DNA of 64,000 nt from Octopus sinensis (lineage: Eukaryota), in contig NW_021824838.1 in assembly GCF_006345805.1 (NCBI RefSeq), forward strand, positions 1 to 64,000. The letters run 5' to 3'. The notes beneath the pieces are model-generated. The model made no database searches. It saw nothing but the letters and a program-made list of their open reading frames with translations, and was not told where the DNA came from. Numbering within the stretch: position 1 is the first letter of the stretch; every line of letters starts with the position of its first letter. Shown piece after piece: positions 44,258-64,000 of this stretch. The translations under genes and the position numbers were made by a program.

Positions 44258-47200
44258 TCTCACACAGAATACAATTTGTTGTGTGTGTGTATAAAATTAA
44301 ATAAGGGTAGAAATTGATATTAATCAATTAAAACCAGTGGCCTAACATATTTTTAAAAAATCCGAAGATTAAAAATTTTTTTTACATTTAAAATTTAGAG
44401 GATTGACCACTAAAAGTAGACAGTCTATATGCTAGATATAGACGTCAAAATCAATTTTAAATAAAAAATGTTGTCTAGCCGGTAAATTGACTGCTGTAGT
44501 TTATTAACTGCAGACTAGTTTCCGATCTCAGCGCGCCAAAGTGAAGGCATTTGAAAGATACACATAAATATAATTTGTAGAACTTTATACATGATGGATT
44601 TCGGTTGAGCGTTCTGTATCTAGTTCTGGAAATTGTGTTTCATAAACGACGGACTATGCTGATGATCTTGCAGATGTTTATGCATCCATATACGTAAATA
44701 TTAACAAGTGAAACTAATTAGTACATAGGTAATCGTTTTTTTATTTCGTATTTTAATCGTATTTTTATTTCATTTGTCTTGCTTATTTTTACACTTTGTT
44801 TTTTTTTGCTGAAATTTTTTCTTGAGAACACATTCTTCGTGGAAAATGGCGATTTTGACATCTATATCTAGCATATAGGCTGTCTATTTTTAGTGGTCAG
44901 TCCTCTAAATTTTGTATGTAAGAAAAATTTTTAATCTTCGGATTTTTTAAAAATATGCTAGGCCACTGGATTTAATTGATTAATATCAATTTCTACCCTT
45001 ATTTAATTTTATATATATATATAATACACATCAATATGAAGCACACAGTGCACCCTGGTGATCAGTTATTGTAAGGGAGATAATATTTTCTAGATCATAC
45101 ATGGTGCAATTAGAAGTTTGAATTTTAAATCGAAGACTAAGGAAGAAGATGCTTACAATGTCCACATTTAATATTGTTTTGCTCTTACTCATTACAAAGA
45201 TGTCGAAATTTCTAGTTGTAGGTAATCTGTTATAGCACCATTTTATTCTTATTTGAAACCATCAGCATTACATAACCTGAGGTAAAAAAAAAGTCAAAGT
45301 TCATTAAACATTTTACGAAGTGAGGCATTTTTTATAGATGGAAATTAATTACAGGTAAAAAGACATTCATGGAGTGTGTCTTTCTCTTTATTGTTTTTCG
45401 CTATCGATTCTAATAAATTTATTTATCTTTTTTAAAGGGCTTGCCAATGAAGGATGGCAAAGGTCATATGCCTTCAAAAGAACAATTAAAATTGTTTATA
45501 ACTACTGTCCTCTTTACCTGTAGTGTGTCACATGCACACGCCAACTTCCTTCAGTATGAAGAATATGCATTTCCTGCAAATTATCCATCAATGATAAGGA
45601 CTCCGTTGTTAAAAGACAAAGTAAGTATTGTTCTTTGGTAAAATACAATAATATACTTACCTTAGTTTTTATTTGATTTCGTATTCGTATTTCATCAAAT
45701 TATAGACTGTCAAGAAATGATCTCAACTGTCAGAGCAATACAGAACTATTTTTATATATCCTAACAAGATTTATTATTTGTGTTAAAATCTAGAATCTGT
45801 ATAATCTATGGTGGTTACACATTTGCACGAAATAATATCCAAAACATTGACAATTTTCCTTTTCTGCTTTGCAGAAATTCCTTATATTCTATTGATTGAA
45901 ATACCTGGGATGGTATGGGCGATAATTTACCTTCGTTTAGACAATTTTTATTAAAACTTTGTTGCTATTAGAGGTGGACAGAGAGGATCCAACAAGGGCC
46001 TTCAACGTGGAACGGGACAACACCCGATGAAACAGCTAAAACTGCTAGAATGGAAAAGCTCTTATTAAGACACAAGGAGTAGATTGTAAGAAAATACAAA
46101 AATACATTTTAATTCATGTTTATTGTTATTTCTTGATAACTTATTAGTCCAAATAAAGGATCAATTACAAATATAAGGGAGAAGATTAAAACTGTAAGAA
46201 ATTATGCATTGTATTTCCTTCCATAGTTTGGTGTTCCGTGTATAAAACTTAGAGGGAAAATATTGTAGATATTCAGGAGGTTATTTGTGCCAGCCTCGCC
46301 TGGCCCCCGTGCCGGTGGCACATAAAAGCACCATCCGTTCGTGTCCGTTTGCCAGCTCCGTCTGGCACCTGTGCGGGTGGCACATAAAAAGCACCCACTA
46401 CACTCACGGAGTGGTTGGCGTTAGGAAGGGCATCCAGCCGTAGAAACACTGCCAGATCTGACTGGGCCTGATGAAGCCTTCCAGCTTCACAGACCCCAGT
46501 TGAACCGTCCAACCCATGCTAGCATGGAGAACGGACGCTAAATGATGATGATGATGTGGTCCACACCAGTCATTGGTTCGAATAAATTGGTCAGTTATAA
46601 TGAAAAAGAATATGCTCTCATTAGGCCGATCGGCACTTATGGTTGCAAAGTACGGACTGGACGAATTTGAAGAGAAGAAAATGCGTTTGGAATGTGGTTG
46701 TAAAGGAGACTGTTACGAGAATTTTACAAGGATCGTTGGACAAATGGACGGGTGTTACAACATGTAGCTTTTTCTGATGTTACTAAAATGTATTTTAGTT
46801 AATATTATTTAACATTATATGGAGGTCAGATGGCAGGACTGCTAGTATGCTGGACAAAATGCTTAGCGGTATTTCGTCTGTCTTTATGTTCTGAGTTCAA
46901 ATTCAACCGAGGTAGACTTTACTTTTTATCATTGTGGGGTCGATAAAATAAGTACCAGTTGAGTACTGGAGTCGATGTAAATCAACCAACCCTGAAATTG
47001 ATGGCCTTGAGCTAAAATTTGAAACCAAGATTATATTATATAACATTGTTAATATTAGGAGGGTACCCCACCAAAAAAAATTGCAACACGGATTCTTCAA
47101 GCCGAGCCAACTGATGGAGACCTAGGGTTATATCAAGAACGAAGATGGTTGGATGATTTCCTGAGTTTCAGTTGGTCACTTGAAAATCTACCCAGAGAGT

Positions 47201-47982
47201 CTAATAACGGTTGTTTCTGATAGGATGGAGGTACGTGGCTTAGTGGTTAGGGTGTTGCTCTCATGATCGGAAGATTGTGGTTTCGATTCCTGGATCAAGC
47301 AACGCATTATGTTCTTGAGCAAAACACTTCGTTTCACGTTGCTGCTGTCCACTCAGCTGGTAAAAATGAGTAATCCCGCGACAGGCTGGCGTCCCATCCA
47401 GTGGGGGTAATTTACACGTAACTGAAACCGGCCCTTATGAATCTGTATGACCCGAGAAGGTAATTTTACCTTTTTAAGATTGGACTCAATGGAAGAGATA
47501 CTTGTGGGACAGTGGGTGAAGAAGACGGATAGATTACACGGTAATACAAAATGGTAGTAAATTAGTAGAGTCGGTAGATCACCAGACAAGACAGAATGTG
47601 GGTTTTGCATTACGAGGTTTTATATTTTGTTTCAAATTACACCGATGTCAAATTTACTTTTAGTTTTCTGAAGGGTCGTTAAAAAACGAACTAGGATTAC
47701 ATTCACCAATATCCATCCTAGATATAAACGGAATTATAAAGGAAGACTAAATCATTAAATTATTAAAAAAAATATTCTTTTTCTTTTTTCTTTTTCATCG
47801 TTCAAAACATTAGAATCCACGAAAAGAGGAAGATCTCATGGCAGCCCTGCCCGACAAAGCTACGACTTTAGATGTTATGGCAATCACAAACCTACTGAGT
47901 GCTAAGACAACCAAATCTTTAGGGGATTTTGAAACACAATATATCTATGATCCGAAAGCTCTTGTATGTGTCAAAGAGTAAG

Positions 47983-48022
<40 letters not shown>

Positions 48023-48355
48023 TAATAATAATAATAACAACAACAGTAATTATGATAATAATAATAATTTTTTTCAACAAGCAATAATCACGCCTCGGAT
48101 TTACCTTATCGTGTTGCTGTCTACTAACTCTCCTCAGGAGACTTTGGCTCCCTTAAGTAAAAAAAAACAGTTGTAATATTTTGCGATGTGGGCTCGATTA
48201 TTGTAAAAGGGTTATATTACTCAGGGAACAAACCGTGTCTAAACTTGATAGCCGCATCGTTTGGGTGATGTTGACGGGAGATTTTACACGCAGCTCTCAC
48301 AGTGGTCAAAAGTTATCCTCTTTAAAGATGATGTTAATAATAGACTAATAAATAA

Positions 48356-48387
<32 letters not shown>

Positions 48388-48445
48388 ATGTATACATATT
48401 ATATATATATATATATATATGTATACTATTTATATATATATATGT

Positions 48446-48483
<38 letters not shown>

Positions 48484-48596
48484 TATATATACATACATAC
48501 ATACATATATATATGTGTATATATATATGTATACTATTTATATATATATATGTATACATATATATTGTATACATATATATATATATACATACATAC

Positions 48597-48627
<31 letters not shown>

Positions 48628-48847
48628 TTTGCATTGTATCAAGTAACTTTAAAACTGATTGTAAATAGACTATTTTTGTAAAACTAATATTACATTTTAA
48701 TTCATATTTTCTGTTTGTGTTTTTGTTTTCAGATTCCAGATGAACCTGAAAGCTATCAGTGACAAAATCAGAAAAAGGAATAAGACCCTGGAAAAGGCTT
48801 ACAATGTTTTAGACCCTGTCAACATTCCTAATGCTATTAGTATTTGA
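20403..48847 (+). CDS. ALOX-like: Lipoxygenase A (PLAT + LOX catalytic domain), 15 coding exons, 673 aa; animal arachidonate-LOX / coral 8R-LOX-like
   Basis: join(20403-20888,22237-22281,27471-27599,28020-28117,29817-29949,30853-30948,32024-32120,32834-32951,34220-34312,37450-37510,40574-40679,41996-42093,45438-45620,47814-47977,48733-48847) = 2022 nt with no internal stop. All introns GT-AG with matching phases. Motifs: WxLAK, H355-Q-x3-H360-L-x2-T-H365, H552-x3-N556, C-terminal PNAISI*. Confidence 0.95.
20985..21376 (-). mobile_element. tRNA-derived SINE family D, full length; second full copy at 52304-52680 (+), 3' fragments at 15270-15417 and 27277-27392, degenerate copy at 11066-11225
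   Basis: Head gaggcgcaatggcccagtggttagggcagcggactcgcggtcgtaggatcgcggtttcgattccc; near-identical copies. Confidence 0.85.
22237..22281 (+). CDS. ALOX-like: LOX-A exon 2 (45 nt, [15 protein letters not shown])
   Basis: tttttcctgtacag|...|gtaagt; matches the LPxDExFS motif of animal LOXs; phase 0-0. Confidence 0.88.
22459..23145. repeat. (TACA)n microsatellite array
   Basis: Direct reading; source of the YVCM/HTYI pseudo-ORFs. Confidence 0.95.
25628..25790. repeat. (ACT)n/(ACC)n trinucleotide repeat
   Basis: Direct reading. Confidence 0.95.
27471..27599 (+). CDS. ALOX-like: LOX-A exon 3 (WNMLTNK...[11 protein letters not shown]...EPE)
   Basis: tctctttcag| acceptor, |gtgtgt donor, 129 nt, WxxLDD motif. 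Confidence 0.88.
28020..28117 (+). CDS. ALOX-like: LOX-A exon 4 ([24 protein letters not shown]...)
   Basis: W-x-x-D-x-x-F-G-x-Q-x-L-N-G-x-N-P LOX motif; catag| and |gtaagt. Confidence 0.93.
28513..28768 (+). mobile_element. mariner MITE with Hsmar1/MADE1-like TIRs and a transposase C-terminal remnant
   Basis: TIR attgggttggtgcataattattgcg / cgcaataattatgcaccagcccaata; internal [19 protein letters not shown]. Confidence 0.85.
29817..29949 (+). CDS. ALOX-like: LOX-A exon 5 (LGVDDEVL...[13 protein letters not shown]...)
   Basis: ttgtag| and |gtaagc; phase 2 in, phase 0 out; LFxxD motif. Confidence 0.92.
30853..30948 (+). CDS. ALOX-like: LOX-A exon 6 (MCVPIALF...[17 protein letters not shown])
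   Basis: PIAIQL motif; ttacag| and |gtaaga. Confidence 0.94.
32024..32120 (+). CDS. ALOX-like: LOX-A exon 7 (IFLPTD...WTLAKMW...HQSLVHL)
   Basis: WxLAK motif and iron ligand H360; ttctttag| acceptor, weaker |gtatta donor. Confidence 0.94.
32834..32951 (+). CDS. ALOX-like: LOX-A exon 8 (LTHLLME...[10 protein letters not shown]...AIN)
   Basis: THLLxE (H365) and HPxxKLLxPH motifs; ttttgtag| and |gtaagt. Confidence 0.95.
33062..33786. mobile_element. Foldback/MITE with ~210-bp terminal inverted repeats (intron 8)
   Basis: 33062-33275 is the reverse complement of 33575-33786 with scattered mismatches; no TSD identified. Confidence 0.8.
34220..34312 (+). CDS. ALOX-like: LOX-A exon 9 ([14 protein letters not shown]...)
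   Basis: ttttag| and |gtaagt; phase 2-2; contains the Coffa-site Gly. Confidence 0.92.
34810..35225 (-). mobile_element. Non-autonomous Helitron-like element
   Basis: On -, ends cccgagcaacgccgggcgatactgCTAG (3' hairpin + CTAG); the 5' end dissolves into (TA)n. Confidence 0.65.
35664..35927 (+). mobile_element. 5'-truncated RTE-clade LINE, ORF2 C-terminus
   Basis: [19 protein letters not shown]...[14 protein letters not shown]...AQDR..WR is the typical RTE/BovB C-terminal motif. Confidence 0.88.
37450..37510 (+). CDS. ALOX-like: LOX-A exon 10 ([20 protein letters not shown])
   Basis: ttttag| and |gtaagt; matches the LPxxxxxR motif. Confidence 0.9.
38190..38880. repeat. Complex (TG/TC/TA) microsatellite with an internal ~120-bp duplication
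   Basis: tatgaatatatgtttgtg...tatgagaatgtgtatctatg occurs twice. Confidence 0.85.
40574..40679 (+). CDS. ALOX-like: LOX-A exon 11 ([15 protein letters not shown]...YY)
   Basis: YxxRDD motif; tttcag| and |gtgagt. Confidence 0.94.
41996..42093 (+). CDS. ALOX-like: LOX-A exon 12 ([16 protein letters not shown]...GIK)
   Basis: DxELQxW motif; tttcag| and |gtaatt. Confidence 0.94.
43246..43703 (+). mobile_element. Two tandem mariner MITEs carrying a transposase C-terminal remnant
   Basis: 43246-43466 and 43489-43703; [18 protein letters not shown](H/Y)VE*; degenerate TIRs gagggt...aagttc..ggct / agccgggac....agaaccc. Confidence 0.75.
44290..45013. mobile_element. TA-flanked MITE with ~170-bp TIRs (intron 12)
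   Basis: tataaaattaaataagggtagaaattgatattaatc... at the left end is mirrored at 44850-45013. Confidence 0.85.
45438..45620 (+). CDS. ALOX-like: LOX-A exon 13 (GLPMKDG...[15 protein letters not shown]...KDK)
   Basis: Iron ligands H552/N556, QY motif; tttaaag| and |gtaagt. Confidence 0.95.
46290..46555 (+). mobile_element. SINE/RTE-associated repeat with (GAT)n tail; related copies at 5700-5875, 33925-34090 (-), 40370-40450
   Basis: Shared tggttggcgttaggaagggcatccagccgtagaaac core and gacgctaaatgatgatgatg tail. Confidence 0.65.
47814..47977 (+). CDS. ALOX-like: LOX-A exon 14 ([14 protein letters not shown]...LGDFE...VK)
   Basis: LP...LS...LG motif; cattag| and |gtaagt. Confidence 0.93.
48733..48847 (+). 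CDS. ALOX-like: LOX-A exon 15 (FQMNL...RN...Y..LDP..IPNAISI*)
   Basis: Canonical LOX C-terminus ending in the iron-ligand Ile; TGA at 48845-48847. Confidence 0.95.
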
Positions 48848-49013
48848 AATACAGCATATACCATACACATACACACACACATATATACATACATACATAC
48901 ATAGTTTAAGATGTGGATTCAGAGAATCGTGTAGTAATCACGAAACGGCTGTTATCCGAAGCGAGCGTATCAAGTGGTTAAATATATTCACGTCTCATAG
49001 CTTCTAAGTTATA

Positions 49014-49073
<60 letters not shown>

Positions 49074-49091
49074 ATATATAATATATATAAT

Positions 49092-49122
<31 letters not shown>

Positions 49123-50262
49123 TATATATATACATATATATATATATATAGGTGGGGAGAGTTCACGGGAGATACAAACAAGACGTGACAACCGTGGCCG
49201 TCTCGTCGGTTTTTCACGCATCGTTTACCAACAACTACATCACTTAATAACTTTGTTTAAGAGGAAGCATTGGATAATATTTTAAGGAAGATCTGATTAC
49301 TATTTCTAATAACATGTCTTGAAGAAAAAAATGTAATTGATGTCACAGAGTCTAAGAGAAGTCAGTTTTCTATAAAGTCGTTATTGTGTTGAGCACTGGG
49401 GGTCAACCTACCCCCTCCTTCGAAACTAGTGGCCTTGTGCCAACATTTTAAATCATTCTGTGTGTATGTGTGTTTGTGTGTGTGTGTGTGTGTGTGTAGA
49501 TTTGTATGATGTCAAAATCTAGTAGCCAGTAAGAACGGAGTGAGGAATTCTCAGTTGCTTCTGAGCAACAAAGGATTTCAGTTAACGAATGAATGGTGGA
49601 TTGTCTGATGTTTGTGTAGAAAGTGTTGAACGATATGGGACCGAGATAAGGCGCTAAATGGGGGAATGATTTGTGTAGGTTGGAACGAAGGGAGGCCAGC
49701 ATCTCCTCTCCTCTCCGCTAGAGCTGTAATCATGTACGTGGAAAATGGGGCAGAAAAGTATTAGCCGAGGTGTTCAGACGAGAAGACTGTTTTGGACGGA
49801 GACCCCATGCCAGTCCTGTGGTCAATATTCACCTGTTTACAACTAAAGGAATAGTTCCTTTCCTCCTTAGGACAACTCAAAAGCTGGTCATGGTGTCGCG
49901 GAGGATTGTAAACAAATGACACCGTCTGTGCGAAGGTGACTTCTGTTTACAATTAACGTGTTCATGACAAAAGGACTACACACGCAAACACACAAACACA
50001 CATACACACACAACATACACAATATGTATACATACACAGATATACATGTACAAACATACACACAGGCGTACGCACACATACACACACACATATATATATA
50101 CGCGTGCGCACATACACATAATGTGTATATATATATATAAAGTATATATACGCAGATATACATGTACATACCTATACACAGGCGTACGCACACACACACA
50201 CATATATATGCAACCCCATTTATATACTTATATAAATGCATGCGCGCACGCACATACACACA

Positions 50263-50345
<83 letters not shown>

Positions 50346-51738
50346 TCTCTCTCATACACACATGCACGCTCACACGAAGGCTTCTCCCCGTTTCTGTTTA
50401 TCACACTTCACTTGCAAGGCAACCCGCGTCTTTAGTAGTAACCATCAGCCACCGTAGACCAGGAGCGGAAATGAAGCAGCAGGGAACGATATAAAAATGA
50501 ACAAGTTTGAGTAGGAAAAGGCTAAAAGAAGTCTTGGGTTGTTAGAATTTGTGTGGTTTGATCTCAAGGTGCTGGACTTCACAAATAGGCGGCAAGAACC
50601 TTGACAAATGGCGAAACTCTGTTGAAACGGAACTTGACGAATTCCTAGGAAAGTTGACCTGGAAACTGTTTGTTTCCTATTTTTGGTATGTAATCAATTG
50701 ATCTTAGCATATTGATATATTTTAGCAAACCCGATTTAATGAAAGGCAATTTTGATTCCTCATCGAATCTGATCTTAGATTTATATATTATTTTTTTTTG
50801 TGTGTGCGTGACTTATTCGAGAAACGTCGGTATGAATAATTGTTTTTTTCCCCCCTGGGACTTCTAAGATTTGTTGGGAATAATTGTCATAAAACTGGAG
50901 CACTGGTTCGAAAGGATTTGGCTAAGATAGCCAGTAGCCAGGTGTTGGCGGCGGTGGTGGTAGATTAAAGGTGGATGAAGTCGACACGTGGGTTTCCCTA
51001 AGGGTTCATCTTACTATATGTCACTGCTAAGTCTTTGGTGAACAGGAGCTTCTTGAAGGAGACACACATGGCCAAGGTGTCGCGTAGTGGAGTTGATTCT
51101 GTAACCATTCAATCATGAAACGAACTTTCCAACAGCTTAGCTATACCTGTATGTCTTGTGTGTGTGTGGGGGGGATGCCTGTAAATATTCTAAATCGTTT
51201 AATACGGTTGCTCTACCGACTCTTTCTCTTTATTAATATTACCTTATAAATAAGGCGGCGAGCTGGCAGACACGTTAGCATGCCGGGCGAAATGCTTAGC
51301 GGTATTTCGTCTGCCACTACGTTCTGAGTTCAAATTCCGCCGAGGTCGACTTTGCCTTTCATCCTTCCGGAGTCGATTAAATAAGTACCAGTTACGCACT
51401 GGGGTCGATCTAATCGACTTAATCCGTTTGTCTGTCCTTGTTTGTCCTGTCTGTGTTTAGCTCCTTGTGGGTGGTAAAGAAATAGGTATTTCGTCTGCCG
51501 CTACGTTCTGAGTTCAAATTCCGCCGACGTCGACTTTACCTTTCATCCTTTCAGGGTCGATTAAATAAGTACCAGTTACGCACTGGGGTCGATCTAATCG
51601 ACTTAATCCGTTTGTCTGTCCTTGTTTGTCTCCTCTATGTTTAGCCCATTATGGGTAATAAATAAAGAAATATCTTATGATAAAAGAACAAAGATAAATT
51701 CTCTCTAGCATTTCTAACAATGGACGGGAAAACGGACG

Positions 51739-51786
<48 letters not shown>

Positions 51787-53144
51787 TAAATACGGACACA
51801 TCCACACACACACACACACAGTGTAGGCAAGTCAAAAGTCAGAGGGAAATCTAGGCCAAGACAAAATATTTTATCAAAAGGCAAATATATTTAAGGAATT
51901 TGTGAGGGAGTATAAGGAATGCGAAGTGAGAACAGTCACCATGTTGGACTATTGTTTTGAATAAATATTATTTGACAGGTAAATGTGTACAAGAGTGTGT
52001 GTGTGTATGTGTGTTTGTGTGTATGTGAGTGTGTGTGATGCTTTTTATTTTTGCAATAAACTTACAGAAAATATATTCAAATCGACTGAGTTTCTTAATT
52101 TTTTTTATTAAACAAAATTGTTTTCTATTTATTTATTTAATTGCTGCCGTCTTTGTCTTCAGTTTCCACAGAAATAATTTCAATCATTTTCCAGAGGAAC
52201 GGTACCATCCAATTTAAGAAGCATCAATGGAGCAGCTTCTTGCAGGCTCGCAAAGTAATCCTAATGAAAATACAAGTTTTTCATCTCTATGATACGACTT
52301 AAAGAGGCGCAATGGTCCAGTGGTTAGGGCAGCGGACTCGCGGTCGTAGGATCGCGGTTTCGATTCCCAGACCGGGCGTTGTGAGTGTTTATTGAGCGAA
52401 AACACCTAAAGCTACACGAGGCTCCGGCAGATGGTGGTGACCCCTGCTGTACTCTTTCACCACAACTTTCTCTCACTCTTACTTCCTGTTTCTGTTGTAC
52501 CTGTATTTCAAAGGGCCGGCCTTGTCACTCTCTGTGTCACGCTGAATATCCCCGAGAACTACGTTAAGGGTACACGTGTCTGTGGAGTGGTCAGCCACTT
52601 ACACGTTAATTTCACGAGTAGGCTGTTCCGTTGATCGGATCAACCGGAACCCTCGTCGTCGTAACCGACGGAATGCTTCCACGACTTAAAAAAAAAGAGT
52701 TCTAATTTAGGGTTTCTTGGCGAGAAGTGAGGTGTCAGTGACGTAAAATCTCTTATGATAACGATGATGATGATGGTGGTAATAATGATGGTCACTCCTT
52801 TTCGTCGATTTCGTTCGAAAGGAAGGATTAAAAACGGAAACTGCATCTATTTGCAATGGATGTGCCGATGTAATTAGAGTCCAGGTATGGGTTTTGCAAT
52901 GAAGTCACTACGAGTAGAATGTTGATTTTGATTTTACCTGGGATTGGACAAAAGTGACTTTCGATTGCAGAATAAGATTCAACTCAAATTGTTTTGATGC
53001 ATCATGAGACATTTTGCCCCACTTAGATCGATACCGGCAATACAGACGGGTAGTCATGATGGGTATACTGGGCTTCGTATATTTTACCCCAGTGTCACTT
53101 TGATGGCATGCACTGCTCTCTCACTCAATAATAATAATAATAAC

Positions 53145-54289: not shown

Positions 54290-54332
<43 letters not shown>

Positions 54333-54348
54333 TAATAATAATAATAAT

Positions 54349-54380
<32 letters not shown>

Positions 54381-54414
54381 GATAATAATAACAATGATAA
54401 TAATAAATAATGAT

Positions 54415-54991: not shown

Positions 54992-55001
54992 AATAATAAT
55001 G

Positions 55002-55045
<44 letters not shown>

Positions 55046-55066
55046 GATGATAATAATATAATAATA

Positions 55067-55104
<38 letters not shown>

Positions 55105-55297
55105 CAGTTCGTAAATGAGGCAGAGGTTTTTGCGTCTTTAACTTTTCTACCTTTTACTTGATTCAGTTATTAGACCGCGGCCATACTGGAGCACAACGTT
55201 GAAGAATATTTAGTCGAATAAATCTACCCTTGTACATTTTTTAGGTCAGGTACTTATTCTATCGGTCGCTTTGGCTGAACCGCTACATGACGAGGAC

Positions 55298-55353
<56 letters not shown>

Positions 55354-56094
55354 TACTATTACTATTATTATTATTATTATTATTATTGTTGTTGTTGTTG
55401 CTATTATTTTGTTAAATATAAACTGCAAAGACTTTAGGTAAGGCATTTATCTACGGTTTCATCCGTTGCCTAGAATGGATGCGTTACATTCTATCATGGG
55501 CGAAACTTTCGTCAGTTTTGACAACACGGGTATGCTAGAATGTATATAATTACATATATTTTATGTATTTATTTATGAATGTATGTATAAATTAGAATTT
55601 GTTAAGGGTCGCTGTGTATTTGCGTGCATGTGTATGTATGTGTGTGTGTGTGTGCGTGTGTATGTATGTATGTGTGTGTGTGCGTGTGTATGTATGTACG
55701 TGTGTGTGCATATGTATGTATGTGTGTGTGTGTGTGTGTGCCTGTGCGCTTTGCATTTTTGTGTGAATCGACATATTTATGTCTTTATGTCTATATGAAC
55801 CAGGAGACAATTGTGTGTGTGTGTGTATGTGTGTGTTCGTACGCTTGTACATAAAAGTTTTTGAGAGACAGACAAGAAAGGAAAGAGAGAGAGAGAGAGA
55901 AAGAAGGAAAGTAAGAAAGACAGAAAGGGGGCGGGTACAAGAACATAAAACACGTAAACAGATAAAGGCTGATAGGCGAGTGTTCCACATGGCCAATCTT
56001 CACGCTAGCGACATCAGTTTAGCATTTATACCAGTAAATCCCCACAGTCAAAACGTTAGACTCGAAGATAATATATATATTATATGCATGTATA

Positions 56095-56122
56095 AATATG
56101 TATGTATATGTAATGTATGTGC

Positions 56123-56154
<32 letters not shown>

Positions 56155-56810
56155 GCATATATATATGTATATATGCATGCACGCATGTATGTATGTATAC
56201 ATGTATGTATGTATTGCATGCATGTATGCATGTATGTATGTATGTATGTTTGTATGTATGCATGTATGTATGTATGTATGTTTGTATGTATATATGTATG
56301 CACGCATGTATGTATGTATGTATGTATGTATGTATGCATGTATGTATGTGTGTATGTATGTATGTATGTATGTATGTATACATGTATGTATGTATGTATG
56401 TATGTATGTATGTATGTATGTATGCACGCATGTATGTATGTATGTATGTATGTATGTATGTATACATGTATGTATGTATGTATGTATGTATGTATGTATG
56501 TATGCACGCATGTATGTATGTATGTATGTATGTATGTATGTATGTATGTATGTATGTATACATGTATGTATGTATGTATGTATGTATGTATGTATGTATG
56601 TATGTATGTATGTATGCACGCATGTATGTATGTATGTATGTATGTATGTATGTATGTATGTATGTATGTATACATGTATGTATGTATGTATGTATGTATG
56701 TATGTATGTATGCACGCATGTATGTATGTATGTATGTATGTATACATGTATGTATGTATGTATGTATGTATGTATGTATGTATGCACGCATGTATGTATG
56801 TATGTGTGTG
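56095..56810. repeat. (TATG)n microsatellite with periodic variant units
   Basis: Direct reading; tatacatg and gcacgcatg interruptions alternate. Confidence 0.95.
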
Positions 56811-56829
56811 CATAACTATGTATATGCAT

Positions 56830-57560
56830 CTTCATTGCTTACATCAACGACATAGATGTCGTTTCATTCTGCATTGAAAACTCTTTGCAGCTGATTCCAA
56901 ACTCCAGAAAGCCATAGACCTGTTTGCTATTTGTCCAATGGGCGGAAAAAAAAACGAATATGCTTTTCAATGGGAAAGAGGTAACTCTGAAACTCCCATA
57001 TTCTCTTCCCTCGGGCGGGTCCCTAGTGTCATCCAACAACACCAGAGATCTTGGAGTAATTGTTGATAATCTAAGCTGAAGTTCCCACGTAAACAGCAAG
57101 GTTGACTTGACCCGCAAGATGTGCTCCTGGATTCTGAGAACGTTCCGGTCTAGAGATGCCTACACCATCATCTTCCTCTGCTCTACTTTTGCCCGAACCC
57201 ACCTTGAGTACTGTTGCCCATTGTGGTCCCTCCACCTATACGAATCAACTCATTATGAAAGTAGAAGCACTCCAGAGGTCCATAACAAGAAAGACAGACG
57301 GTATGAGAAGCATTGATTATTGGGGTCGACTAAAAAACTCAATCTTCACTCTCTCCAATGCCGCCGGGAGCGCTACATCATCTGTGTGATGTGGAAAATA
57401 TTCCATCAATATTGCACAAATGATGTTGATATCAATTTTAAAATCCAGCCAAGACTTGACCACCGTGCCATCCGCCCACACACAAAAAAAAATTTACCGG
57501 TGAGTGTGTTACATTATAAGGCACAAAAAAAAAAGACTCTCCCCAGACACAACAGAATAT
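56830..57560 (+). pseudogene. CR1/L2-clade LINE ORF2 fragment, frameshifted
   Basis: RDLGVIVD...WILRTFRSR...HLEYCCPLWS...LHSLQCRRERYII..WKI. Confidence 0.85.
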
Positions 57561-57616
57561 GCTTCAACACACGAACTCACATAAAGACCAAATACCAAAT
57601 CGAAATATATATATAT

Positions 57617-57672
<56 letters not shown>

Positions 57673-58454
57673 TGTGTATGCACATACATATGTACGTACG
57701 TACGTACGTACATATATACAGATACATACATACACACACACACATACATATATATATGATTAATATATAGAATTTGGGAAAACAAATTTCCAAATCAATC
57801 AGGTGTAACCCTTCAGTATTATATGCATCTACATATCGTACTTTGGGGTCTTATTTATCGTATATTTATATATTTATCTATAAATATACAAAGTATCTGA
57901 TATATGGCTCAGTGGTTAGAGCGTCGAGCTTACGATCGTGAGGTTGTGAGCTCGAATCCCGGACCGGGCTGCGTGTTGTGTTCTTGAGTAAGACACTTTA
58001 TGTTTCACGTTGCTCTAGTTCACTCAGCTGTAGAAATGAGTTGCGACGTCACAGGTGCCAAGCTGTATCGGGCCTTGCCTTTCCTTGGACAACATCGGTG
58101 ACGTGGAGAGGGGAGACGGTATGCAGGGGCGACTGCTGGTCTTCCATAAAAACCTTGCCCAGACTTGTGCCTCAGAGGTAACTCCTAGGTGCAAACTCAT
58201 ATCATATATATATTCTACTAAATCCTTTTAAAATGTTGGGCCCGAAGGCCGCGGCCATGCTGGGGCACCACCGCTGTTAACGGATTAAGTCGATTACATC
58301 GACCCCAGTGCGTAACTGGTACTTAATTTATCGACCCGAATGATGAAAGGCAAAGTCGACCTCGGCGGAATTTGAACTCAGGATACGTAACGGCAGACGA
58401 AATACCGTAAGCATTTCACCCGGCGTGCTAACGTTTCTACCAGCTCGCCGCCTT

Positions 58455-58496
<42 letters not shown>

Positions 58497-58720
58497 TATA
58501 TATAAATTATATATATATAAGTTATGTATATATATATATATAAACTTTATGGAAATGGATGCGTGGCGTTCAATTAAATAATAATATAAATAATATGTAA
58601 ATGTGTGTGTATATATACAGTTTTCCATTTTTCCATTTTTCTCCCGTTGTTTGCGTATTTAACTCATTTGTCTTCGTACTTCATGTTGTTTACTGTTGGT
58701 GACGTCCTGTACCCATATAT

Positions 58721-58760
<40 letters not shown>

Positions 58761-59160
58761 CATATATATATATATGGAGAGTTTACGAAAGAAAAATACA
58801 AAAGACGAAGACAGGTGGTGTACAAAACAAACAAATGTATTTGTATAACGCTCAGGAATTGAAAAAGTCTTTTATGTTTCGAGCCTACGCTCTTCTACAA
58901 ACAGGAGCACAAAGAAAAAAAAAAAAACAAGGAGAGAAAAAAATGTGTGTAGTGGCTAAGATGGAATGTATATATATTTCAGTGGGGAAACGCACAAGAT
59001 GAAAAAAACAGAAAATTTTGTTTTACTGGATTTAAGAGTATATTAGAGCCATGATAAGAATATTATACAGTTTTGTACAAAATAAGGCTTTGTTGTTTCA
59101 ACATAATTGAGGTAAGGACCGGTTTCGTATTGCTCAGCAGACTGAGAATTGAAAAAGATA

Positions 59161-59663
59161 TCTATATATATAAAACTGTAGTTGTGTGAGTGTCTGTCCC
59201 CTTCGATTTAGATTCCTAACTACTCCCACATTTTGCGGTGCAGTTTAACCAAATTCGGGTATCTTATAGTCGTGATTCATATCGAGCCCGTCTGGCTATT
59301 AGCGTGCGTCTACGATGAGTCTACGATTTTAAAAATAATTTAACATCATTTTTTATTCCATTTTAATGCATAATTTTTCGTGTGTCGAGTTGGCGTCCAT
59401 GGTCACACCTGCACCTGTTTGCTTCTCCCCCTTCTTCCCTCCCTCGTGAAGCTGTGGGGAAGGGAGTGTAAGGAAATCAACGTCGTAAAGCGTTGTCAAG
59501 GAGACCAGCGTTCTTTTAGAACAACGACTTCATGGCTTGAAGACACCAAAACAGAAATGGCTAAGAAAGCCCGAATCGGCATCTATAAGAGAAGTAACTC
59601 TCTAAAAATGCTTATATAGTTATTTCCCTTACAAACCCGAGCAACGCCGGGCGATACTGCTAG
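59161..59663 (+). mobile_element. Complete non-autonomous Helitron-like element
   Basis: A|TCTATATATATAAAA 5' end, subterminal hairpin cccgagcaacgccggg, CTAG|T 3' end, inserted in an AT dinucleotide with no TSD. Confidence 0.8.
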
Positions 59664-59770
59664 TATATTTATAAAATATTTCTGTATTAAAGGTGGAGGT
59701 GGAAGTAGCACAGAAGTAAGTCTAAGACACTTTAATTTAAAAGGGAATTTTATAAAAATGATTTTAAAAT

Positions 59771-59776
59771 TTTATT
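59771..59776 (-). terminator. Candidate polyadenylation signal (AATAAA) of LOX-B
   Basis: tttatt on +, about 500 nt downstream of the LOX-B stop; the AT-rich context makes this weak. Confidence 0.3.
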
Positions 59777-60274
59777 AAAAAAATATTACCGGTTTCAATG
59801 TATCTCATCTAATCAAATATCAGTAAACATTTATAAAAATTAGAAGTAAAAACAGTTTATCTTCTGCCTGGGGGTCCATACATGCATACATACGAGCCGT
59901 CACTAGAACTGTCAGAATACGTAAAACTTCCCAACTTCACATATCTAGAAAGACAGCCCACATGTATGAGTATACACACATAAAACAAACGCATACAGAT
60001 CTGTATGTAGATGCACTGAGTCTAAAAACTTGCGTATAAAAATACAAACATGGATAACTTCTCTGTTGATGCTGCTGAAGATCCAATGAGGGAGCCTTGG
60101 ATCTAAGTTCGAAACCCGCCCTTTCTCCATTGACGAGAAATGTAGAAAAATGTAAATAATAGTAAACCCGCAATCTGTATTTATACATGTGTGTGTCTTT
60201 GTGTATATACAAACGTAGATACATATATACATGAGTGTGTGTGTGTGCATGTGTGTCCGTCCGTGTGTTCTATT

Positions 60275-60389
60275 TTAAATACTAATAGCATTAGGAATGT
60301 TGGCTGGATCAAGAACTTTGTAAGGTCTTTTCAGGGTCTTATTTCTTTTTTTGATTTCGCCACTGATAGTTTTCAGATTTCTCTGGAAT
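60275..60389 (-). CDS. ALOX-like: LOX-B last exon ([37 protein letters not shown])
   Basis: About 83% nt identity to 48733-48847; TAA stop; C-terminal Ile. Confidence 0.93.
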
Positions 60390-61213: not shown

Positions 61214-61283
<70 letters not shown>

Positions 61284-62332
61284 TGTATGATTTAATGTTG
61301 ATACTTACTCTCTGACACATACAAGAGCTTTCGGATCATAGATATATTGTGTTTCAAAATCCCCTAAAGATTTGGTTGTCTTAGCACTCAATAGGTTTGT
61401 GATTGCCATAACATTTAAAGTCGTAGCTTTATCGGGCAGGGCTGCAAGGATATCCTTCTCTGTTCTTGGTGTCTAAGAATTAAAATAATGAGAAAAAGAG
61501 AAGAGAAAAAATATTCTTTTTTATTGATTAAATGATAAATAAACGTCTTAATGTTCTTATATAATTTGACTCACTGGCGTGACTGTGTGGTAAAATGTCT
61601 GCTTCCGAACCACCTTGGGTAAGTGTTTTCTACTATAGCCCTGAGCCGGCCAAAGCCGTGTGAGGCGAGTTGACAGATGGAAGCTGAAAGAAGCCCGTAG
61701 TGTATGTGTGTATACAAACACACACACACACACACACAATCTCAAAAAACACACCACACACACACACAAACACACACACACATGTGTGTGTGTCTGCGTC
61801 TTTGTGTCTGTGTTTATTGCCAATCACCATTTGAAAACTGGTGTTGTTTTGTTTACGTCCTCGTAACTTAGGTGTACTTTATTTTATCGAACCCGAAAGG
61901 ATAAAAAGTAAAGTCGATCTCCGCGGAGTTTGAGCTCGGAACGTAAAGACTGATGTGTCCTCAAGAATAACGACGGGCTTTGACATAATTTCCACCGGCT
62001 TTTCCTGCTACAAAACATTGATATTCCATTTGTGGTCATCTGTAATCTAAAAAACCATTAATATTTTACATCTGGCAGAATGATACGCTTCAACAGTATA
62101 CCAATAATTTAATATCAGAAAAATAATCAAAGAACCACCAATTATCATCAGTCGAAGACTTGGCAAAGGCGAAATTCACATCAGAGGAAGAAATTATGCA
62201 GTTAACAAACCACGGGAACCTTCATTTAGGCAAGTATGGAATAACTGAACAGGGATAAAAACACCCCAAAATCCATGAATGGAAAGGAATTGAAGGTTAT
62301 TGCAAATATGAAAGGCGAACAAAACGTCCCTC

Positions 62333-62384
<52 letters not shown>

Positions 62385-63638
62385 ATACGTATGTATATAT
62401 CCTGTGTAAGGTGGTGAGCTGGTTGAAACGTCGGCACGCCTGACGAAATTTTTATAGCCATTTCGGCTCTCTTTATGTTCTAAAGCCACCGAGGTCGACT
62501 TTGCATTTCACTCTCTTGTGGTCGATAAAATAAGTACCAGTTAAGCTCTGGTGTCGATATAATTGACATCCCCTCCTCCGAAATCGCTGGCCTTGTGCCA
62601 AAATTTGCAACTAATATATATTATATATATATGTACATGTGTGTGTTTGTATCTCAAGTGTATGTACATATATTTTTTAATATTATATTATTATTATTAA
62701 TATAAGGAAATTAATATCCAAACTCATCATAAAGTTTGGATATTCACTCGTGTGAAAGAAATTACATGCCTATAATGCAATGACAAATATATTGGCTAAA
62801 GAAGGTAAGAATTTATAAATCGAGTCAGGGTACATAAGCAACAAATAAAAGAGTCATCACTTATATGTAATGAGCAAATAAGCATTTGTGAGAATGGAAG
62901 ATTCAAAATATTTCCTTTTTTGAAATGAGGGACGAAAATATTCTACTAGGAAAGGCAGGAGGAGAATACTTTACAAGAATTATAATTGCGGAGGTAAACT
63001 GAAGATAATCAATAACGCTACAACAAAAAATGCAAAAAAAAAGTTACTCTATACGTATTATTTTATGTGTGTGTTTGTGAAGCCGAAGACATCGGAAGGC
63101 TTTTTACAAAACACAAATATTTCCTGACACAGAGTTTGTATCATTCTGTCATTTTTAAAGATATTTTTTCATGTAATTAATACTTTTAATGTACGGAAAT
63201 CTTGTAGTCCTTGTTTCATCAGGCGTTGACGATCTTACATGTTAAAGGTTCTCGTTCGACTCTCTCGGCCTTGAACAGAATTCTAGGCCTTAATACAAAT
63301 TTTTGTAACATGCTAGAAGATGAAATGAGTTTTTAATTCTCCGAAAATCTCGTAATTCTTTATTCAAAATTGATAACTTGATCAAATAAAAAAGCGGAGG
63401 CAAATAAAAACTGAGTGAAGTATATTATTGTATTTTACCAAAGAACAATACTTACTTTGTCTTTTAACAACGGAGTCCTTATCATTGATGGATAATTTGC
63501 AGGAAATGCATATTCTTCATACTGAAGGAAGTTGGCGTGTGCATGTGACACACTAGAGATATAGAGGACAGTAGTTATAAACAATTTTAATTGTTCTTTT
63601 GAAGGCATATGACCTCTACCATCCTTCATTGGCAAGCC
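60275..63638 (-). CDS. ALOX-like: Lipoxygenase B (paralog), 3' part only; gene continues beyond the right edge
   Basis: Three minus-strand exons with the same lengths (183, 164, 115 nt), phases and GT-AG sites as LOX-A exons 13-15; open frame to TAA. Confidence 0.92.
61309..61472 (-). CDS. ALOX-like: LOX-B exon equivalent to exon 14 ([22 protein letters not shown]...CVR)
   Basis: Reverse complement aligns to 47814-47977; acceptor ttcttag, donor gtaagt. Confidence 0.93.
63456..63638 (-). CDS. ALOX-like: LOX-B exon equivalent to exon 13 (GLPMKDGRG...[12 protein letters not shown]...KDK)
   Basis: 5 nt differences from 45438-45620; intact splice sites. Confidence 0.93.
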
Positions 63639-64000
63639 CTTTAAAAAAGATAAATTTATTAGAATCGATAGCGAAAAACAATAAAGAGAAAGACACACTC
63701 CATGAATGTCTTTTTACCTGTAATTAATTTCCATCTATAAAAAATGCCTCACTTCGTAAAATGTTTAATGAACTTTGACTTATTTACCTCGGGTTATGTA
63801 ATGCTGATGGTTTCAAATAAGAATAAAATGGTGCTCCTAGTGATTTGCCTACGACTAGAAATTTCAACATCTTTGTAATGAGTAAGAGAAAAAGAATTAA
63901 ATAAATATATTGTATGTATATGGAGTGGAGCGTCGCTCTCAGAAGGCTTCTCATGAAAAAATCGGTTTGTGAACAACTTTTTGAAAATAAAACATCTCGA

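What the first reader, a model, noticed from the sequence alone, without database searches (positions are those of the whole stretch)
45180..63890. Tail-to-tail lipoxygenase pair with mosaic identity (gene-conversion tracts)
Seen: exon 13 differs at 5/183 nt, and homology extends ~250 bp into the upstream intron and ~60 bp downstream (45180-45680 vs 63890-63395), then stops. Exon 14 differs at 9 of its first 27 nt but only 4 of the remaining 137, with unrelated flanking introns. Exon 15 differs at 19/115. Inference: an old inverted duplication whose catalytic-core exons are being re-homogenised, helped by the inverted orientation (stops 11.4 kb apart). Such concerted evolution would confuse orthology and read mapping.
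Basis: partly seen in the sequence, partly recalled or inferred. Interest (0 to 1): 0.75.

Follow-up and report, generated by a model that had tools for sequence, protein, structure and literature searches.

The report
Gene conversion between paired octopus lipoxygenases
Two old, tail-to-tail lipoxygenase genes of Octopus sinensis keep copying two short stretches (one exon with its intron edges, and most of the next exon) onto each other, a clean but ordinary case of gene conversion between neighbouring duplicates.

Summary
LOX-A and LOX-B differ at 5/183 nt (exon 13), 9/27 then 4/137 nt (exon 14) and 19/115 nt (exon 15). Homology runs 272 bp into the intron upstream of exon 13 and 83 bp downstream. 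The stop codons are 11,427 bp apart.

The window is Octopus sinensis scaffold VCDQ01003559.1. LOX-A is an intact 15-exon, 673-aa PLAT+lipoxygenase gene. O. bimaculoides has the same tail-to-tail pair, so this is not an assembly artefact.

Five-way alignments (O. sinensis A/B, O. bimaculoides A/B, O. vulgaris A) show the tree flipping four times within 3.4 kb:
- By gene (bootstrap 100%): both outer flanks of exon 13, the first 27 nt of exon 14, exon 15.
- By species (98.8%): a ~430-bp tract over exon 13 and 133 bp inside exon 14.

Species-grouping sites number 15 versus 3 inside tract 1 and 0 versus 60 outside (p=2e-13). Most are intronic or synonymous. A–B dS is 0.03–0.14 and 0.065 in the tracts, against 0.6–0.9, 0.25–0.36 and ≥1.3 elsewhere.

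Recurrent interlocus gene conversion on an old duplication is well supported. The proposed role of the inverted orientation is untested, and the rest of LOX-B could not be retrieved. The mechanism is well known, so interest is modest.

The parts
20403..48847 (+). LOX-A: complete 15-coding-exon gene, 673 aa, PLAT + lipoxygenase domains. Identical to O. sinensis XP_029653849 (annotated 'allene oxide synthase-lipoxygenase protein').
   Evidence: Spliced model with AG/GT at every junction. 100% match to P0152. Pfam PF01477 + PF00305. L002 is identical to window 10403-58847.
45438..45620 (+). LOX-A exon 13 (61 codons). It carries the third and fourth iron-ligand positions in the motif S-H-A-H-A-N.
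   Evidence: Aligns to the HAAVN helix of coral 11R- and 8R-lipoxygenase structures.
45166..45703 (+). Homology island / conversion tract 1 in LOX-A: exon 13 plus 272 bp of intron 12 and 83 bp of intron 13. The most recently homogenised core is 45291-45658 (368 bp), with 5 substitutions and one 4-nt indel versus B.
   Evidence: BLASTN at 92.8% over 539 bp. Alignment A1. Species-grouping sites lie at A1 columns 205-612. Fisher p=2e-13. Bootstrap 98.8% for (Obim_A, Obim_B). Exact-identity runs of 138 nt and 126 nt (the 91- and 35-nt runs are contiguous).
47814..47840 (+). First 27 nt of LOX-A exon 14: unconverted, 9 differences from B. The A-type and B-type are each conserved across species.
   Evidence: dS 0.6-0.9. 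Bootstrap 100% for (Osin_B, Obim_B).
47841..47973 (+). Conversion tract 2 in LOX-A (at most 133 bp, wholly inside exon 14). It includes a 78-nt run identical to B.
   Evidence: Four species-grouping sites, all synonymous. dS 0.065 between paralogues against 0.18-0.26 between orthologues. Bootstrap 98.8%. Identity run 47896-47973.
48733..48847 (+). LOX-A exon 15, with the C-terminal ...IPNAISI and a TGA stop. Not converted since the species split.
   Evidence: 19/115 differences from B. All informative sites group by gene. Bootstrap 100%.
48848..60274 (.). 11,427-bp spacer between the two stop codons. It is rich in repeats and microsatellites. It is collinear with O. vulgaris as far as that locus was fetched.
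60275..60389 (-). LOX-B exon 15 (TAA stop).
   Evidence: The O. bimaculoides orthologue lies at L003 33070-32956.
61309..61472 (-). LOX-B exon 14. Positions 61446-61472 are unconverted; 61313-61445 are conversion tract 2.
63456..63638 (-). LOX-B exon 13, with the same S-H-A-H-A-N motif. It differs from A at K8R and at F-T-C to Y-I-S.
63373..63902 (-). Homology island / conversion tract 1 in LOX-B. The gene continues upstream beyond the window end at 64000; exon 12 is not in the window.
   Evidence: In O. bimaculoides, B exons 12 and 11 lie 515 bp and about 830 bp upstream of exon 13. The scaffold ends at 66720.

Best explanation
LOX-A (+ strand, complete) and LOX-B (- strand, only its last three exons in the window) are old paralogous animal lipoxygenase genes lying tail to tail.

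Their sequences have drifted far apart almost everywhere: exons 11-12, the first 27 nt of exon 14, exon 15 and nearly all intron sequence. Two short islands are repeatedly overwritten by non-reciprocal copying between the genes (interlocus gene conversion).
- Tract 1 is about 370-540 bp. It covers exon 13 with roughly 200-270 bp of intron 12 and 40-80 bp of intron 13.
- Tract 2 is at most 133 bp, inside exon 14.

Shown:
- Conversion continued after O. sinensis/vulgaris split from O. bimaculoides. With a paralogue as outgroup, both lineages show derived bases shared by their A and B copies.
- It went on or differed after O. sinensis and O. vulgaris separated. The O. sinensis A tract is closer to its own B than to O. 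vulgaris A, and O. vulgaris A carries B-type bases about 90 bp further upstream.

Inferred:
- Tract 2 went B to A in the sinensis/vulgaris lineage. This changed two residues of the LOX-A protein (..AVPCV.. to ..ALVCV..).
- The mechanism is double-strand-break repair that uses the nearby paralogue as template.
- Conversion persists only where enough uninterrupted identity remains (runs of 138, 126 and 78 nt here), so each event preserves the substrate for the next.
- Tract ends sit where identity collapses, or where selection keeps the genes different.
For: 1. The counts, the intron homology and its sharp ends are confirmed.

2. O. bimaculoides has the same tail-to-tail pair, with stops 6.5 kb apart, and a B orthologue. 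The duplication therefore predates the species split.

3. Four-taxon site patterns:
- In alignment A1, columns 170-625 have 15 species-grouping against 3 gene-grouping sites. The flanks have 0 against 60 (Fisher p=1.9e-13).
- In alignment A2, gene-grouping sites run up to column 425. Four species-grouping sites follow at columns 475-526, and gene-grouping resumes from column 564.
- In the well-aligned part of A3 (column 129 onward, covering the upstream intron flank, exon 15 and the sequence 3' of the stop), all informative sites are gene-grouping apart from two third-pattern (X) sites and none is species-grouping. Earlier columns are microsatellite and poorly aligned.

4. NJ bootstrap flips between 100% (Osin_B, Obim_B) and 98.8% (Obim_A, Obim_B) four times along the region.

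5. The homogenised sites are neutral. Eleven of the 15 sites in tract 1 are intronic and one is synonymous. All four in tract 2 are synonymous.

6. In the tract-1 intron, paralogues are closer than orthologues. Osin_A-Osin_B is 2/197 (1.0%), Osin_A-Obim_A is 5.4%, Osin_B-Obim_B is 9.6% and Osin_A-Ovul_A is 4.0%.

7. A-B dS by segment:
- exon 13: 0.027 in O. sinensis, 0.141 in O. bimaculoides
- exon 14, nt 28-164: 0.065
- exon 14, nt 1-27: 0.6-0.9
- exon 15: 0.25-0.36
- exons 11-12: 1.3-2.5

8. Exon 13 is not intrinsically invariant. Another paralogue's exon 13 is only 78.7% identical to A's.

9. With the P0155 gene as outgroup, exon 13 positions 6 and 46 are derived in both O. sinensis copies. 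Positions 12 and 33, and exon 14 position 123, are derived in both O. bimaculoides copies.

10. 'ALVCV' occurs in B of both species and in O. sinensis/vulgaris A. O. bimaculoides A keeps 'AVPCV', like the Argonauta 'AIPCV'.

11. O. vulgaris A equals O. sinensis B at every A/B difference between 45204 and 45290.

12. Maximum chi-square p=0.004; longest-run test p=0.02-0.05.
Against: - No event was observed directly; the case rests on one genome per species.
- O. vulgaris B could not be fetched. The B-to-A direction inferred for O. vulgaris intron 12 assumes its B resembles O. sinensis B.
- The outgroup used for polarity is a paralogue, not an orthologue from a third species.
- Three old A/B differences persist inside tract 1 (A1 columns 214, 228, 462). 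This needs patchy tracts, several events with different ends, or selection.
- Sample sizes per segment are small (23-39 synonymous sites).
- There is no GC enrichment in the tract: 31% against 39% in the surrounding introns. A GC-biased conversion signature is therefore absent.
- The O. sinensis scaffold is an unplaced 66.7-kb piece, and no reads were examined.
Confidence: 0.9

Rival explanations
1. There is no conversion. Exon 13 and most of exon 14 are simply under very strong purifying selection in both genes, and this extends to splicing signals or a non-coding element in the adjacent intron.
For: Exon 13 encodes two iron-ligand positions, and the amino-acid sequence of exon 14 nt 28-164 is highly conserved. 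Splice-proximal intron sequence is often constrained.
Against: - Constraint cannot make paralogues more alike than orthologues at neutral sites. There are 15 species-grouping sites in tract 1 (11 intronic, 1 synonymous) and 4 synonymous ones in tract 2.
- The tract-1 intron is 1.0% different between paralogues against 5-10% between orthologues.
- Another paralogue's exon 13 is only 78.7% identical to A's.
- No Rfam family matches the intron tract.
Confidence: 0.03
2. Assembly artefact: the near-identical blocks result from collapse, a haplotig or a chimeric inverted join at the end of an unplaced scaffold.
For: The window is an unplaced 66.7-kb scaffold and LOX-B runs into its end. Inverted joins near contig ends are a known long-read artefact (my own knowledge, not tested here).
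Against: - The same tail-to-tail arrangement, the same exon-by-exon mosaic and orthologous B-specific flanks are present on O. bimaculoides chromosome CM046620.1.
- The introns between the blocks are unrelated between A and B, so this is not a palindromic join.
- The O. vulgaris spacer is collinear with the window as far as it was fetched.
Confidence: 0.02
3. The exchange was reciprocal rather than non-reciprocal. Double crossovers, or inversion and re-inversion between the inverted copies, swapped segments and mimic conversion.
For: Inverted repeats 11-18 kb apart can recombine to invert the interval between them. Runs of 126-138 identical nt could support this.
Against: - Reciprocal exchange swaps sequences but does not make the two copies identical. 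Here both copies carry the same lineage-specific derived bases.
- Gene-specific flanks and exon 15 remain attached to the same gene in both species.
- Tracts of 130-430 bp are typical of conversion (my own knowledge).
Confidence: 0.04

Closest known systems
Interlocus (ectopic) gene conversion and mosaic concerted evolution between adjacent paralogues. Examples: C. elegans hsp16 and hsp70 inverted pairs (PMC3966223), mammalian gene pairs homogenised for over 100 My (PMC2720389), macaque CYP1A1/CYP1A2 (PMC3199271), mammalian HSP70 genes (PMC5865164).
   Same: - Short tracts of about 100-500 bp.
- Paralogues are more alike than orthologues inside the tracts.
- Tracts extend into introns.
- Orthologous relationships are retained outside the tracts.
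- The process is recurrent over long periods.
- The genes are physically adjacent.
   Different: - The host genes are cephalopod lipoxygenases. My two literature searches found no prior description.
- The two islands are separated by roughly 2 kb of unalignable intron.
- One tract boundary lies inside an exon and is conserved in two species.
Arm-to-arm gene conversion in chromosomal palindromes and inverted duplicates (PMC3403216).
   Same: The copies are in inverted orientation on one chromosome, the exchange is intrachromosomal and non-reciprocal, and a crossover would invert rather than delete.
   Different: Palindrome arms are near-identical over tens of kb to Mb. Here only about 0.6 kb of an 18-kb interval is homogenised and the rest is deeply diverged. 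Whether orientation matters here is untested.
Coral 8R- and 11R-lipoxygenases (PDB 2FNQ, 3FG1, 3VF1) and the Plexaura allene oxide synthase-lipoxygenase fusion (3DY5). These are the closest solved relatives of the encoded protein.
   Same: PLAT + lipoxygenase architecture in LOX-A, the iron-ligand helix H-x-x-x-N, and a C-terminal Ile. E=2.5e-19 to 1.7e-18 over the last 143 residues.
   Different: There is no catalase-like allene oxide synthase domain: LOX-A is 673 aa with only PLAT and LOX domains. The ligand motif is H-A-H-A-N rather than H-A-A-V-N. Catalytic activity and positional specificity are unknown.

Membership tests
Interlocus gene conversion / concerted evolution of paralogues | Within a bounded tract, paralogues of one species are more similar to each other than to their orthologues in another species. 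| tested here: met
   Tract 1 has 15 species-grouping against 3 gene-grouping sites. Bootstrap is 98.8% for (Obim_A, Obim_B). The intron is 1.0% different between paralogues against 5.4-9.6% between orthologues. Tract 2 has 4 species-grouping sites and 98.8% bootstrap.
Interlocus gene conversion / concerted evolution of paralogues | Sequence flanking the tract keeps the orthologous (gene-wise) relationship, showing that the duplication predates the speciation. | tested here: met
   The flanks of tract 1 have 60 gene-grouping and 0 species-grouping sites. Exon 14 nt 1-27, exon 15 and their flanks give 100% bootstrap for (Osin_B, Obim_B). Exons 11-12 have dS of 1.3 or more.
Interlocus gene conversion / concerted evolution of paralogues | Homogenisation affects neutral sites (introns, synonymous positions), not only constrained ones. 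| tested here: met
   Eleven intronic and 5 synonymous species-grouping sites. dS is 0.03-0.14 inside the tracts against 0.25-2.5 outside.
Interlocus gene conversion / concerted evolution of paralogues | Non-random clustering of identities along the alignment (GENECONV or maximum chi-square type test). | tested here: met
   Maximum chi-square p=0.004. Longest concordant run p=0.023 in O. sinensis and 0.054 in O. bimaculoides, on the CDS alone. GENECONV itself was not available.
Interlocus gene conversion / concerted evolution of paralogues | Direct observation of converted and unconverted alleles within a population or pedigree. | not testable with these tools
   Only one assembly per species is available. 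The O. sinensis against O. vulgaris difference at 45204-45290 is suggestive only.
Animal lipoxygenase (PLAT + PF00305) | N-terminal PLAT domain followed by the lipoxygenase catalytic domain. | tested here: met
   For LOX-A: PF01477 E=5.5e-14 and PF00305 E=3.6e-59. For LOX-B only the C-terminal 153 aa are visible; they match PF00305 with E=1e-14. The N-terminal part lies outside the window.
Animal lipoxygenase (PLAT + PF00305) | Iron ligands: two His on one helix, His + Asn/His on a second helix, and the C-terminal Ile carboxylate. | tested here: inconclusive
   LOX-A has H-QSLV-H (exons 7/8), H-AHA-N (exon 13) and a terminal Ile (read from the sequence; aligned to solved LOX structures). LOX-B shows H-AHA-N and the terminal Ile, but its first two His positions could not be seen. 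No activity was tested.
Allene oxide synthase-lipoxygenase fusion protein (the name in the public annotation) | A catalase-related allene oxide synthase domain fused N-terminally to the lipoxygenase. | tested here: not met
   LOX-A is 673 aa and Pfam finds only PLAT and Lipoxygenase. The coral fusion in PDB is 1066 aa (3DY5). The name reflects similarity to the LOX half only.

The most novel reading that the evidence does not exclude
The mosaic may be a balance between conversion and selection rather than passive homogenisation.

In this reading LOX-B is a long-lived partner that both receives and donates sequence. The B-to-A transfer put two B residues (L, V) into LOX-A of O. sinensis/vulgaris.

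Selection would keep a few isozyme-specific positions different against the conversion pressure. The candidates are:
- The Cys-to-Ser position four residues before the iron-ligand His. It is B-specific in both species, in the middle of tract 1. In O. sinensis it has grown into F-T-C to Y-I-S, three adjacent non-synonymous changes inside 368 bp that otherwise carry 2 substitutions and one 4-nt indel.
- The sharply bounded first nine codons of exon 14.

A sub-variant: LOX-B is only a 3' gene fragment. In O. bimaculoides it is annotated as a 227-aa product. It would then act as a conversion donor cassette for a working enzyme.
Probability: 0.15. Interest if true: 0.5.

Novelty: new member of a known kind. 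Interest (0 to 1): 0.3.

Why it matters
Practical consequences:
- Trees or orthology calls built from exons 13-14 of these octopus lipoxygenases will wrongly place the A/B duplication as recent and species-specific. In exons 11-12 the two are as diverged as the Argonauta paralogues are from A, which suggests the duplication may be as old as the Octopus-Argonauta split.
- Short reads from about 0.6 kb of each gene will map ambiguously.
- Variants called there may be paralogous rather than allelic.

Biological interest:
- This is a tidy natural example of how conversion is confined to small identity islands in genes whose introns have otherwise turned over completely.
- It shows a neighbouring paralogue altering the protein sequence of an intact enzyme (two residues of LOX-A).

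It opens no new question. The mechanism is textbook.

Tried and rejected
1. Retrieving the rest of LOX-B failed.
- All three homologue searches and the one representative search were used. None returned a B-type protein.
- The 227-aa O. bimaculoides model overlapping B could not be recovered by sequence.
- The O. vulgaris locus ends about 1.2 kb short of B exon 15.
- The O. sinensis scaffold has only 2.7 kb beyond the window.

2. The first homologue search, using the 153-aa C-terminus, missed the 100%-identical full-length protein. It was repeated with the full-length model.

3. Rfam on 44.9-49.1 kb found only sub-threshold microsatellite-driven miRNA hits around 48.35-48.9 kb (mostly intron 14), plus one sub-threshold viral 3'-UTR hit at 48943-49062. 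Nothing fell in the conserved intron flank. A hidden ncRNA was therefore rejected as the cause of the intron identity.

4. The dispersed-repeat explanation for the intron flank was rejected: there are no other copies.

5. GC-biased conversion signature: the tract is not GC-enriched. This was not pursued further.

6. The direction of the recent tract-1 event in O. sinensis was considered. Both O. sinensis copies are nearer O. bimaculoides A than B. That may only reflect a long O. bimaculoides B branch, so no direction is claimed.

7. ORF listing of the whole window found only microsatellite-derived ORFs besides LOX-A exon 1.

8. Loci L003 and L004 never appeared in the script folder. Their sequences were imported through DNA alignment instead.

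Full report
WHAT THE WINDOW IS

The window is positions 1-64000 of Octopus sinensis unplaced scaffold VCDQ01003559.1 (66,720 bp). A locus fetched from that record is base-for-base identical to window 10403-58847.

Mapping a full-length relative and refining splice sites gives LOX-A as 15 coding exons from 20403 to 48847 on the + strand. Every junction is AG/GT. The product is 673 aa, identical to the annotated O. sinensis protein XP_029653849.

Pfam finds a PLAT domain and a lipoxygenase domain and nothing else. The public name 'allene oxide synthase-lipoxygenase' therefore reflects similarity to the lipoxygenase half of the coral fusion protein only. The closest solved structures are coral 11R- and 8R-lipoxygenases.

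On the - strand the last three exons of a second lipoxygenase, LOX-B, lie at 63638-63456, 61472-61309 and 60389-60275. The frames are open and the splice sites canonical. LOX-B continues upstream past the window end.

CHECK OF THE OBSERVATION

- Exon 13: 5/183 differences.
- Exon 14: 9 differences in the first 27 nt and 4 in the other 137.
- Exon 15: 19/115 differences.

BLASTN aligns 45166-45703 with 63902-63373 at 92.8% over 539 bp. That is exon 13 plus 272 bp of upstream and 83 bp of downstream intron. Outside this island A and B differ by 33-38%.

The intron flank occurs nowhere else in the window or in two other lipoxygenase loci. Rfam finds nothing in it. The stops are 11,427 bp apart.

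The differences are non-randomly distributed along the CDS. Maximum chi-square gives p=0.004 and the longest concordant run p=0.02.

Two minor corrections apply. About 65-75 nt of intron upstream of exon 14 are alignable at roughly 70% identity. About 60 nt upstream of exon 15 are also alignable.

COMPARATIVE EVIDENCE

The 90%-identity cluster of the LOX-A protein contains the O. vulgaris and O. bimaculoides orthologues, and their genomic loci could be fetched.

O. bimaculoides chromosome CM046620.1 has the same tail-to-tail arrangement. LOX-A ends at L003 position 26469. A lipoxygenase gene on the opposite strand begins 6.5 kb downstream, and its exons 15, 14, 13, 12 and 11 were located. The pair is therefore older than the split of these species, and it is not an artefact of the O. 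sinensis assembly.

In O. vulgaris the spacer is collinear with the window, but the fetched locus stops about 1.2 kb before LOX-B.

THE MOSAIC

I made five-way alignments around each exon: O. sinensis A and B, O. bimaculoides A and B, and O. vulgaris A. I scored each informative site by whether it groups the sequences by gene (A|B) or by species.

Around exon 13:
- The outer flanks have 60 gene-grouping and no species-grouping sites.
- The central ~430 bp have 15 species-grouping and 3 gene-grouping sites (Fisher p=1.9e-13).

In the exon 14 block:
- The upstream intron and the first 27 nt group by gene.
- The next stretch has four species-grouping sites, all synonymous.
- From the last few bases of the exon onward, sites group by gene again.

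In the exon 15 block, from column 129 on (upstream intron flank, exon 15 and the sequence 3' of the stop), no site groups by species. All informative sites there group by gene apart from two that show the third pattern.

NJ bootstrap per segment gives 100% for (O. sinensis B, O. bimaculoides B) in the unconverted segments. It gives 98.8% for (O. bimaculoides A, O. bimaculoides B) in the two tracts. The topology thus flips four times in 3.4 kb.

Eleven of the 15 species-grouping sites in tract 1 are intronic and one is synonymous.

In the intronic part of tract 1:
- The two O. sinensis paralogues differ at 2/197 sites (1.0%).
- The A orthologues differ by 5.4%.
- The B orthologues differ by 9.6%.
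- O. sinensis A and O. vulgaris A differ by 4.0%.

SYNONYMOUS DIVERGENCE AND THE AGE OF THE DUPLICATION

Nei-Gojobori estimates of dS between A and B:
- exon 13: 0.027 (O. sinensis) and 0.141 (O. bimaculoides)
- exon 14, nt 28-164: 0.065
- exon 14, nt 1-27: 0.6-0.9
- exon 15: 0.25-0.36
- exons 11-12 (O. bimaculoides B): 1.3-2.5

At the protein level B is 62% identical to A in exons 11-12. That is about as far from A as the two Argonauta hians genes of the same H-A-H-A-N subfamily (68-70%). In exon 13 B is 92-97% identical to A, against 72-74% for the Argonauta genes.

Exon 13 is not intrinsically frozen. Another O. bimaculoides paralogue is only 78.7% identical to A there.

The overall dN/dS between A and B in exons 11-12 is about 0.1-0.17. 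This is similar to the value between A orthologues (0.13), so LOX-B has been constrained for most of its history.

NUMBER, TIMING AND DIRECTION OF EVENTS

With the P0155 paralogue as outgroup:
- Two exon 13 sites are derived in both O. sinensis copies.
- Two exon 13 sites and one exon 14 site are derived in both O. bimaculoides copies.

On this polarity, conversion has occurred in both lineages since they split.

In exon 14, the residues ..ALVCV.. are found in LOX-B of both species and in LOX-A of O. sinensis and O. vulgaris. O. bimaculoides LOX-A keeps ..AVPCV.., like the Argonauta ..AIPCV... The simplest reading is a B-to-A transfer in the sinensis/vulgaris lineage that changed two residues of LOX-A.

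In intron 12, O. vulgaris A carries the O. sinensis B state at every A/B difference between 45204 and 45290, including bases derived relative to both O. bimaculoides copies. Tract ends therefore differ between these two very close species.

For the very recent event in O. sinensis tract 1 I do not claim a direction.

HOW IT MOST LIKELY WORKS

This part is inferred from established knowledge of recombinational repair. A break in one copy is repaired from the nearby paralogue, and a few hundred bases are copied without reciprocal exchange.

Such repair needs a stretch of near-perfect identity. Here the longest exact runs are 138 and 126 nt in tract 1 and 78 nt in tract 2, against 26 nt in exon 15. 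Each conversion renews the identity that permits the next one. Regions that have fallen below the threshold diverge freely and their introns turn over.

The tract is not GC-enriched.

WHAT REMAINS ODD

One old A/B difference sits in the middle of tract 1 in both species: Cys in A and Ser in B, four residues before the iron-ligand His (window 45520). In O. sinensis B it is joined by two more adjacent non-synonymous changes (F-T-C to Y-I-S). The surrounding 368 bp otherwise carry 2 substitutions and one 4-nt indel.

The 5' boundary of tract 2 lies inside exon 14 at the same place in both species.

Either patchy heteroduplex repair or selection for isozyme-specific residues could explain both observations. 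The data cannot decide.

Exon 15's dS (0.25-0.36) is much lower than that of exons 11-12. This may mean an older conversion there, or it may be sampling noise from about 23 synonymous sites.

WHAT COULD NOT BE DONE

The rest of LOX-B was not retrievable. In O. bimaculoides the gene overlapping B is annotated with a 227-aa product, only eight residues more than exons 11-15 encode. Whether LOX-B is a full gene or a 3' fragment is therefore open. No reads, transcripts or population data were available.

COMPARISON WITH WHAT IS KNOWN

Interlocus gene conversion between adjacent paralogues is well documented: short tracts, extension into introns, persistence over long periods, and occurrence in direct and inverted orientation alike. 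Examples are PMC3966223 (read) and PMC2720389, PMC3199271, PMC5865164 and PMC3403216 (listed).

The review read here reports conversion in both orientations and leaves the effect of orientation undetermined.

My searches found no description of this lipoxygenase pair.

VERDICT

This is a new, well-resolved example of a known process. Its value is mainly practical, for orthology inference, mapping and annotation of octopus lipoxygenases. Interest 0.3.

Noticed in passing
window 45514-45520 (LOX-A) / 63556-63562 (LOX-B): Three adjacent non-synonymous differences (F-T-C in A, Y-I-S in B) sit inside a 368-bp block that otherwise carries only 2 substitutions and one 4-nt indel. The Cys/Ser difference is B-specific in both O. 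sinensis and O. bimaculoides, so an old difference has survived in the middle of a conversion tract.
   Followed up: partly
L004 about 97744-97830 (O. vulgaris LOX-A intron 12), equivalent to window 45204-45290: O. vulgaris LOX-A carries the O. sinensis LOX-B bases at every A/B difference in this stretch. The conversion tract end therefore differs between two very closely related species, or the site is polymorphic.
   Followed up: partly
L004 from about 98200 (O. vulgaris intron 13, roughly 40 nt after exon 13): The O. vulgaris sequence becomes completely unrelated to O. sinensis and O. bimaculoides LOX-A here. This is probably an insertion, and it shortens the A/B homology island on its 3' side in that species.
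   Followed up: no
window 48673-48847 and 60275-60451: A-B dS in exon 15 (0.25-0.36) is several-fold lower than in exons 11-12 (1.3 or more), and about 60 nt of intron upstream of exon 15 are still alignable. This may be the trace of an older conversion that predates the species split, or sampling noise.
   Followed up: partly
L003 32956-36469 and beyond (O. bimaculoides LOX-B): The gene overlapping LOX-B is annotated with a product of only 227 aa, eight residues more than exons 11-15 encode. There is also an assembly gap (run of N) in its intron 14. LOX-B may be mis-annotated, or it may be a 3' fragment.
   Followed up: partly
window 20403-48847: The public name 'allene oxide synthase-lipoxygenase protein' is misleading, because the protein has only PLAT and lipoxygenase domains. 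Its iron-ligand motif reads H-A-H-A-N instead of the usual H-A-A-V-N. This variant is shared by LOX-A, LOX-B and two Argonauta hians genes, but not by the other Octopus paralogues examined (P0154-P0157, P0185, P0003).
   Followed up: partly
window 22459-23151 and 56071-56829: Two ~700-bp compound microsatellite arrays match each other in inverted orientation at 87-88%. One lies in LOX-A intron 2 and one in the spacer. They generate long spurious ORFs.
   Followed up: no
window 29237-29637, 34808-35195, 41432-41833, 51250-51673, 52304-52677, 8804-10778; inverted pairs 40913-41080/41593-41760 and 44279-44452/44851-45024: Copies of roughly 400-bp dispersed repeats are 90-95% identical to copies on another O. 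sinensis scaffold (L001). Two pairs form 170-nt inverted repeats inside LOX-A introns 11 and 12; the second pair ends 140 bp before the A/B homology island.
   Followed up: no
L005 (O. bimaculoides CM046620.1 1.894-1.928 Mb) and L003 (1.809-1.846 Mb): At least four lipoxygenase genes lie within about 120 kb of one O. bimaculoides chromosome: LOX-A, LOX-B, a 722-aa gene and P0155. This is a local gene cluster with other potential conversion partners.
   Followed up: no
tools (against 24): A homologue search with the 153-aa C-terminus returned only one distant hit and missed the 100%-identical full-length protein, which the full-length query then found.
   Followed up: yes
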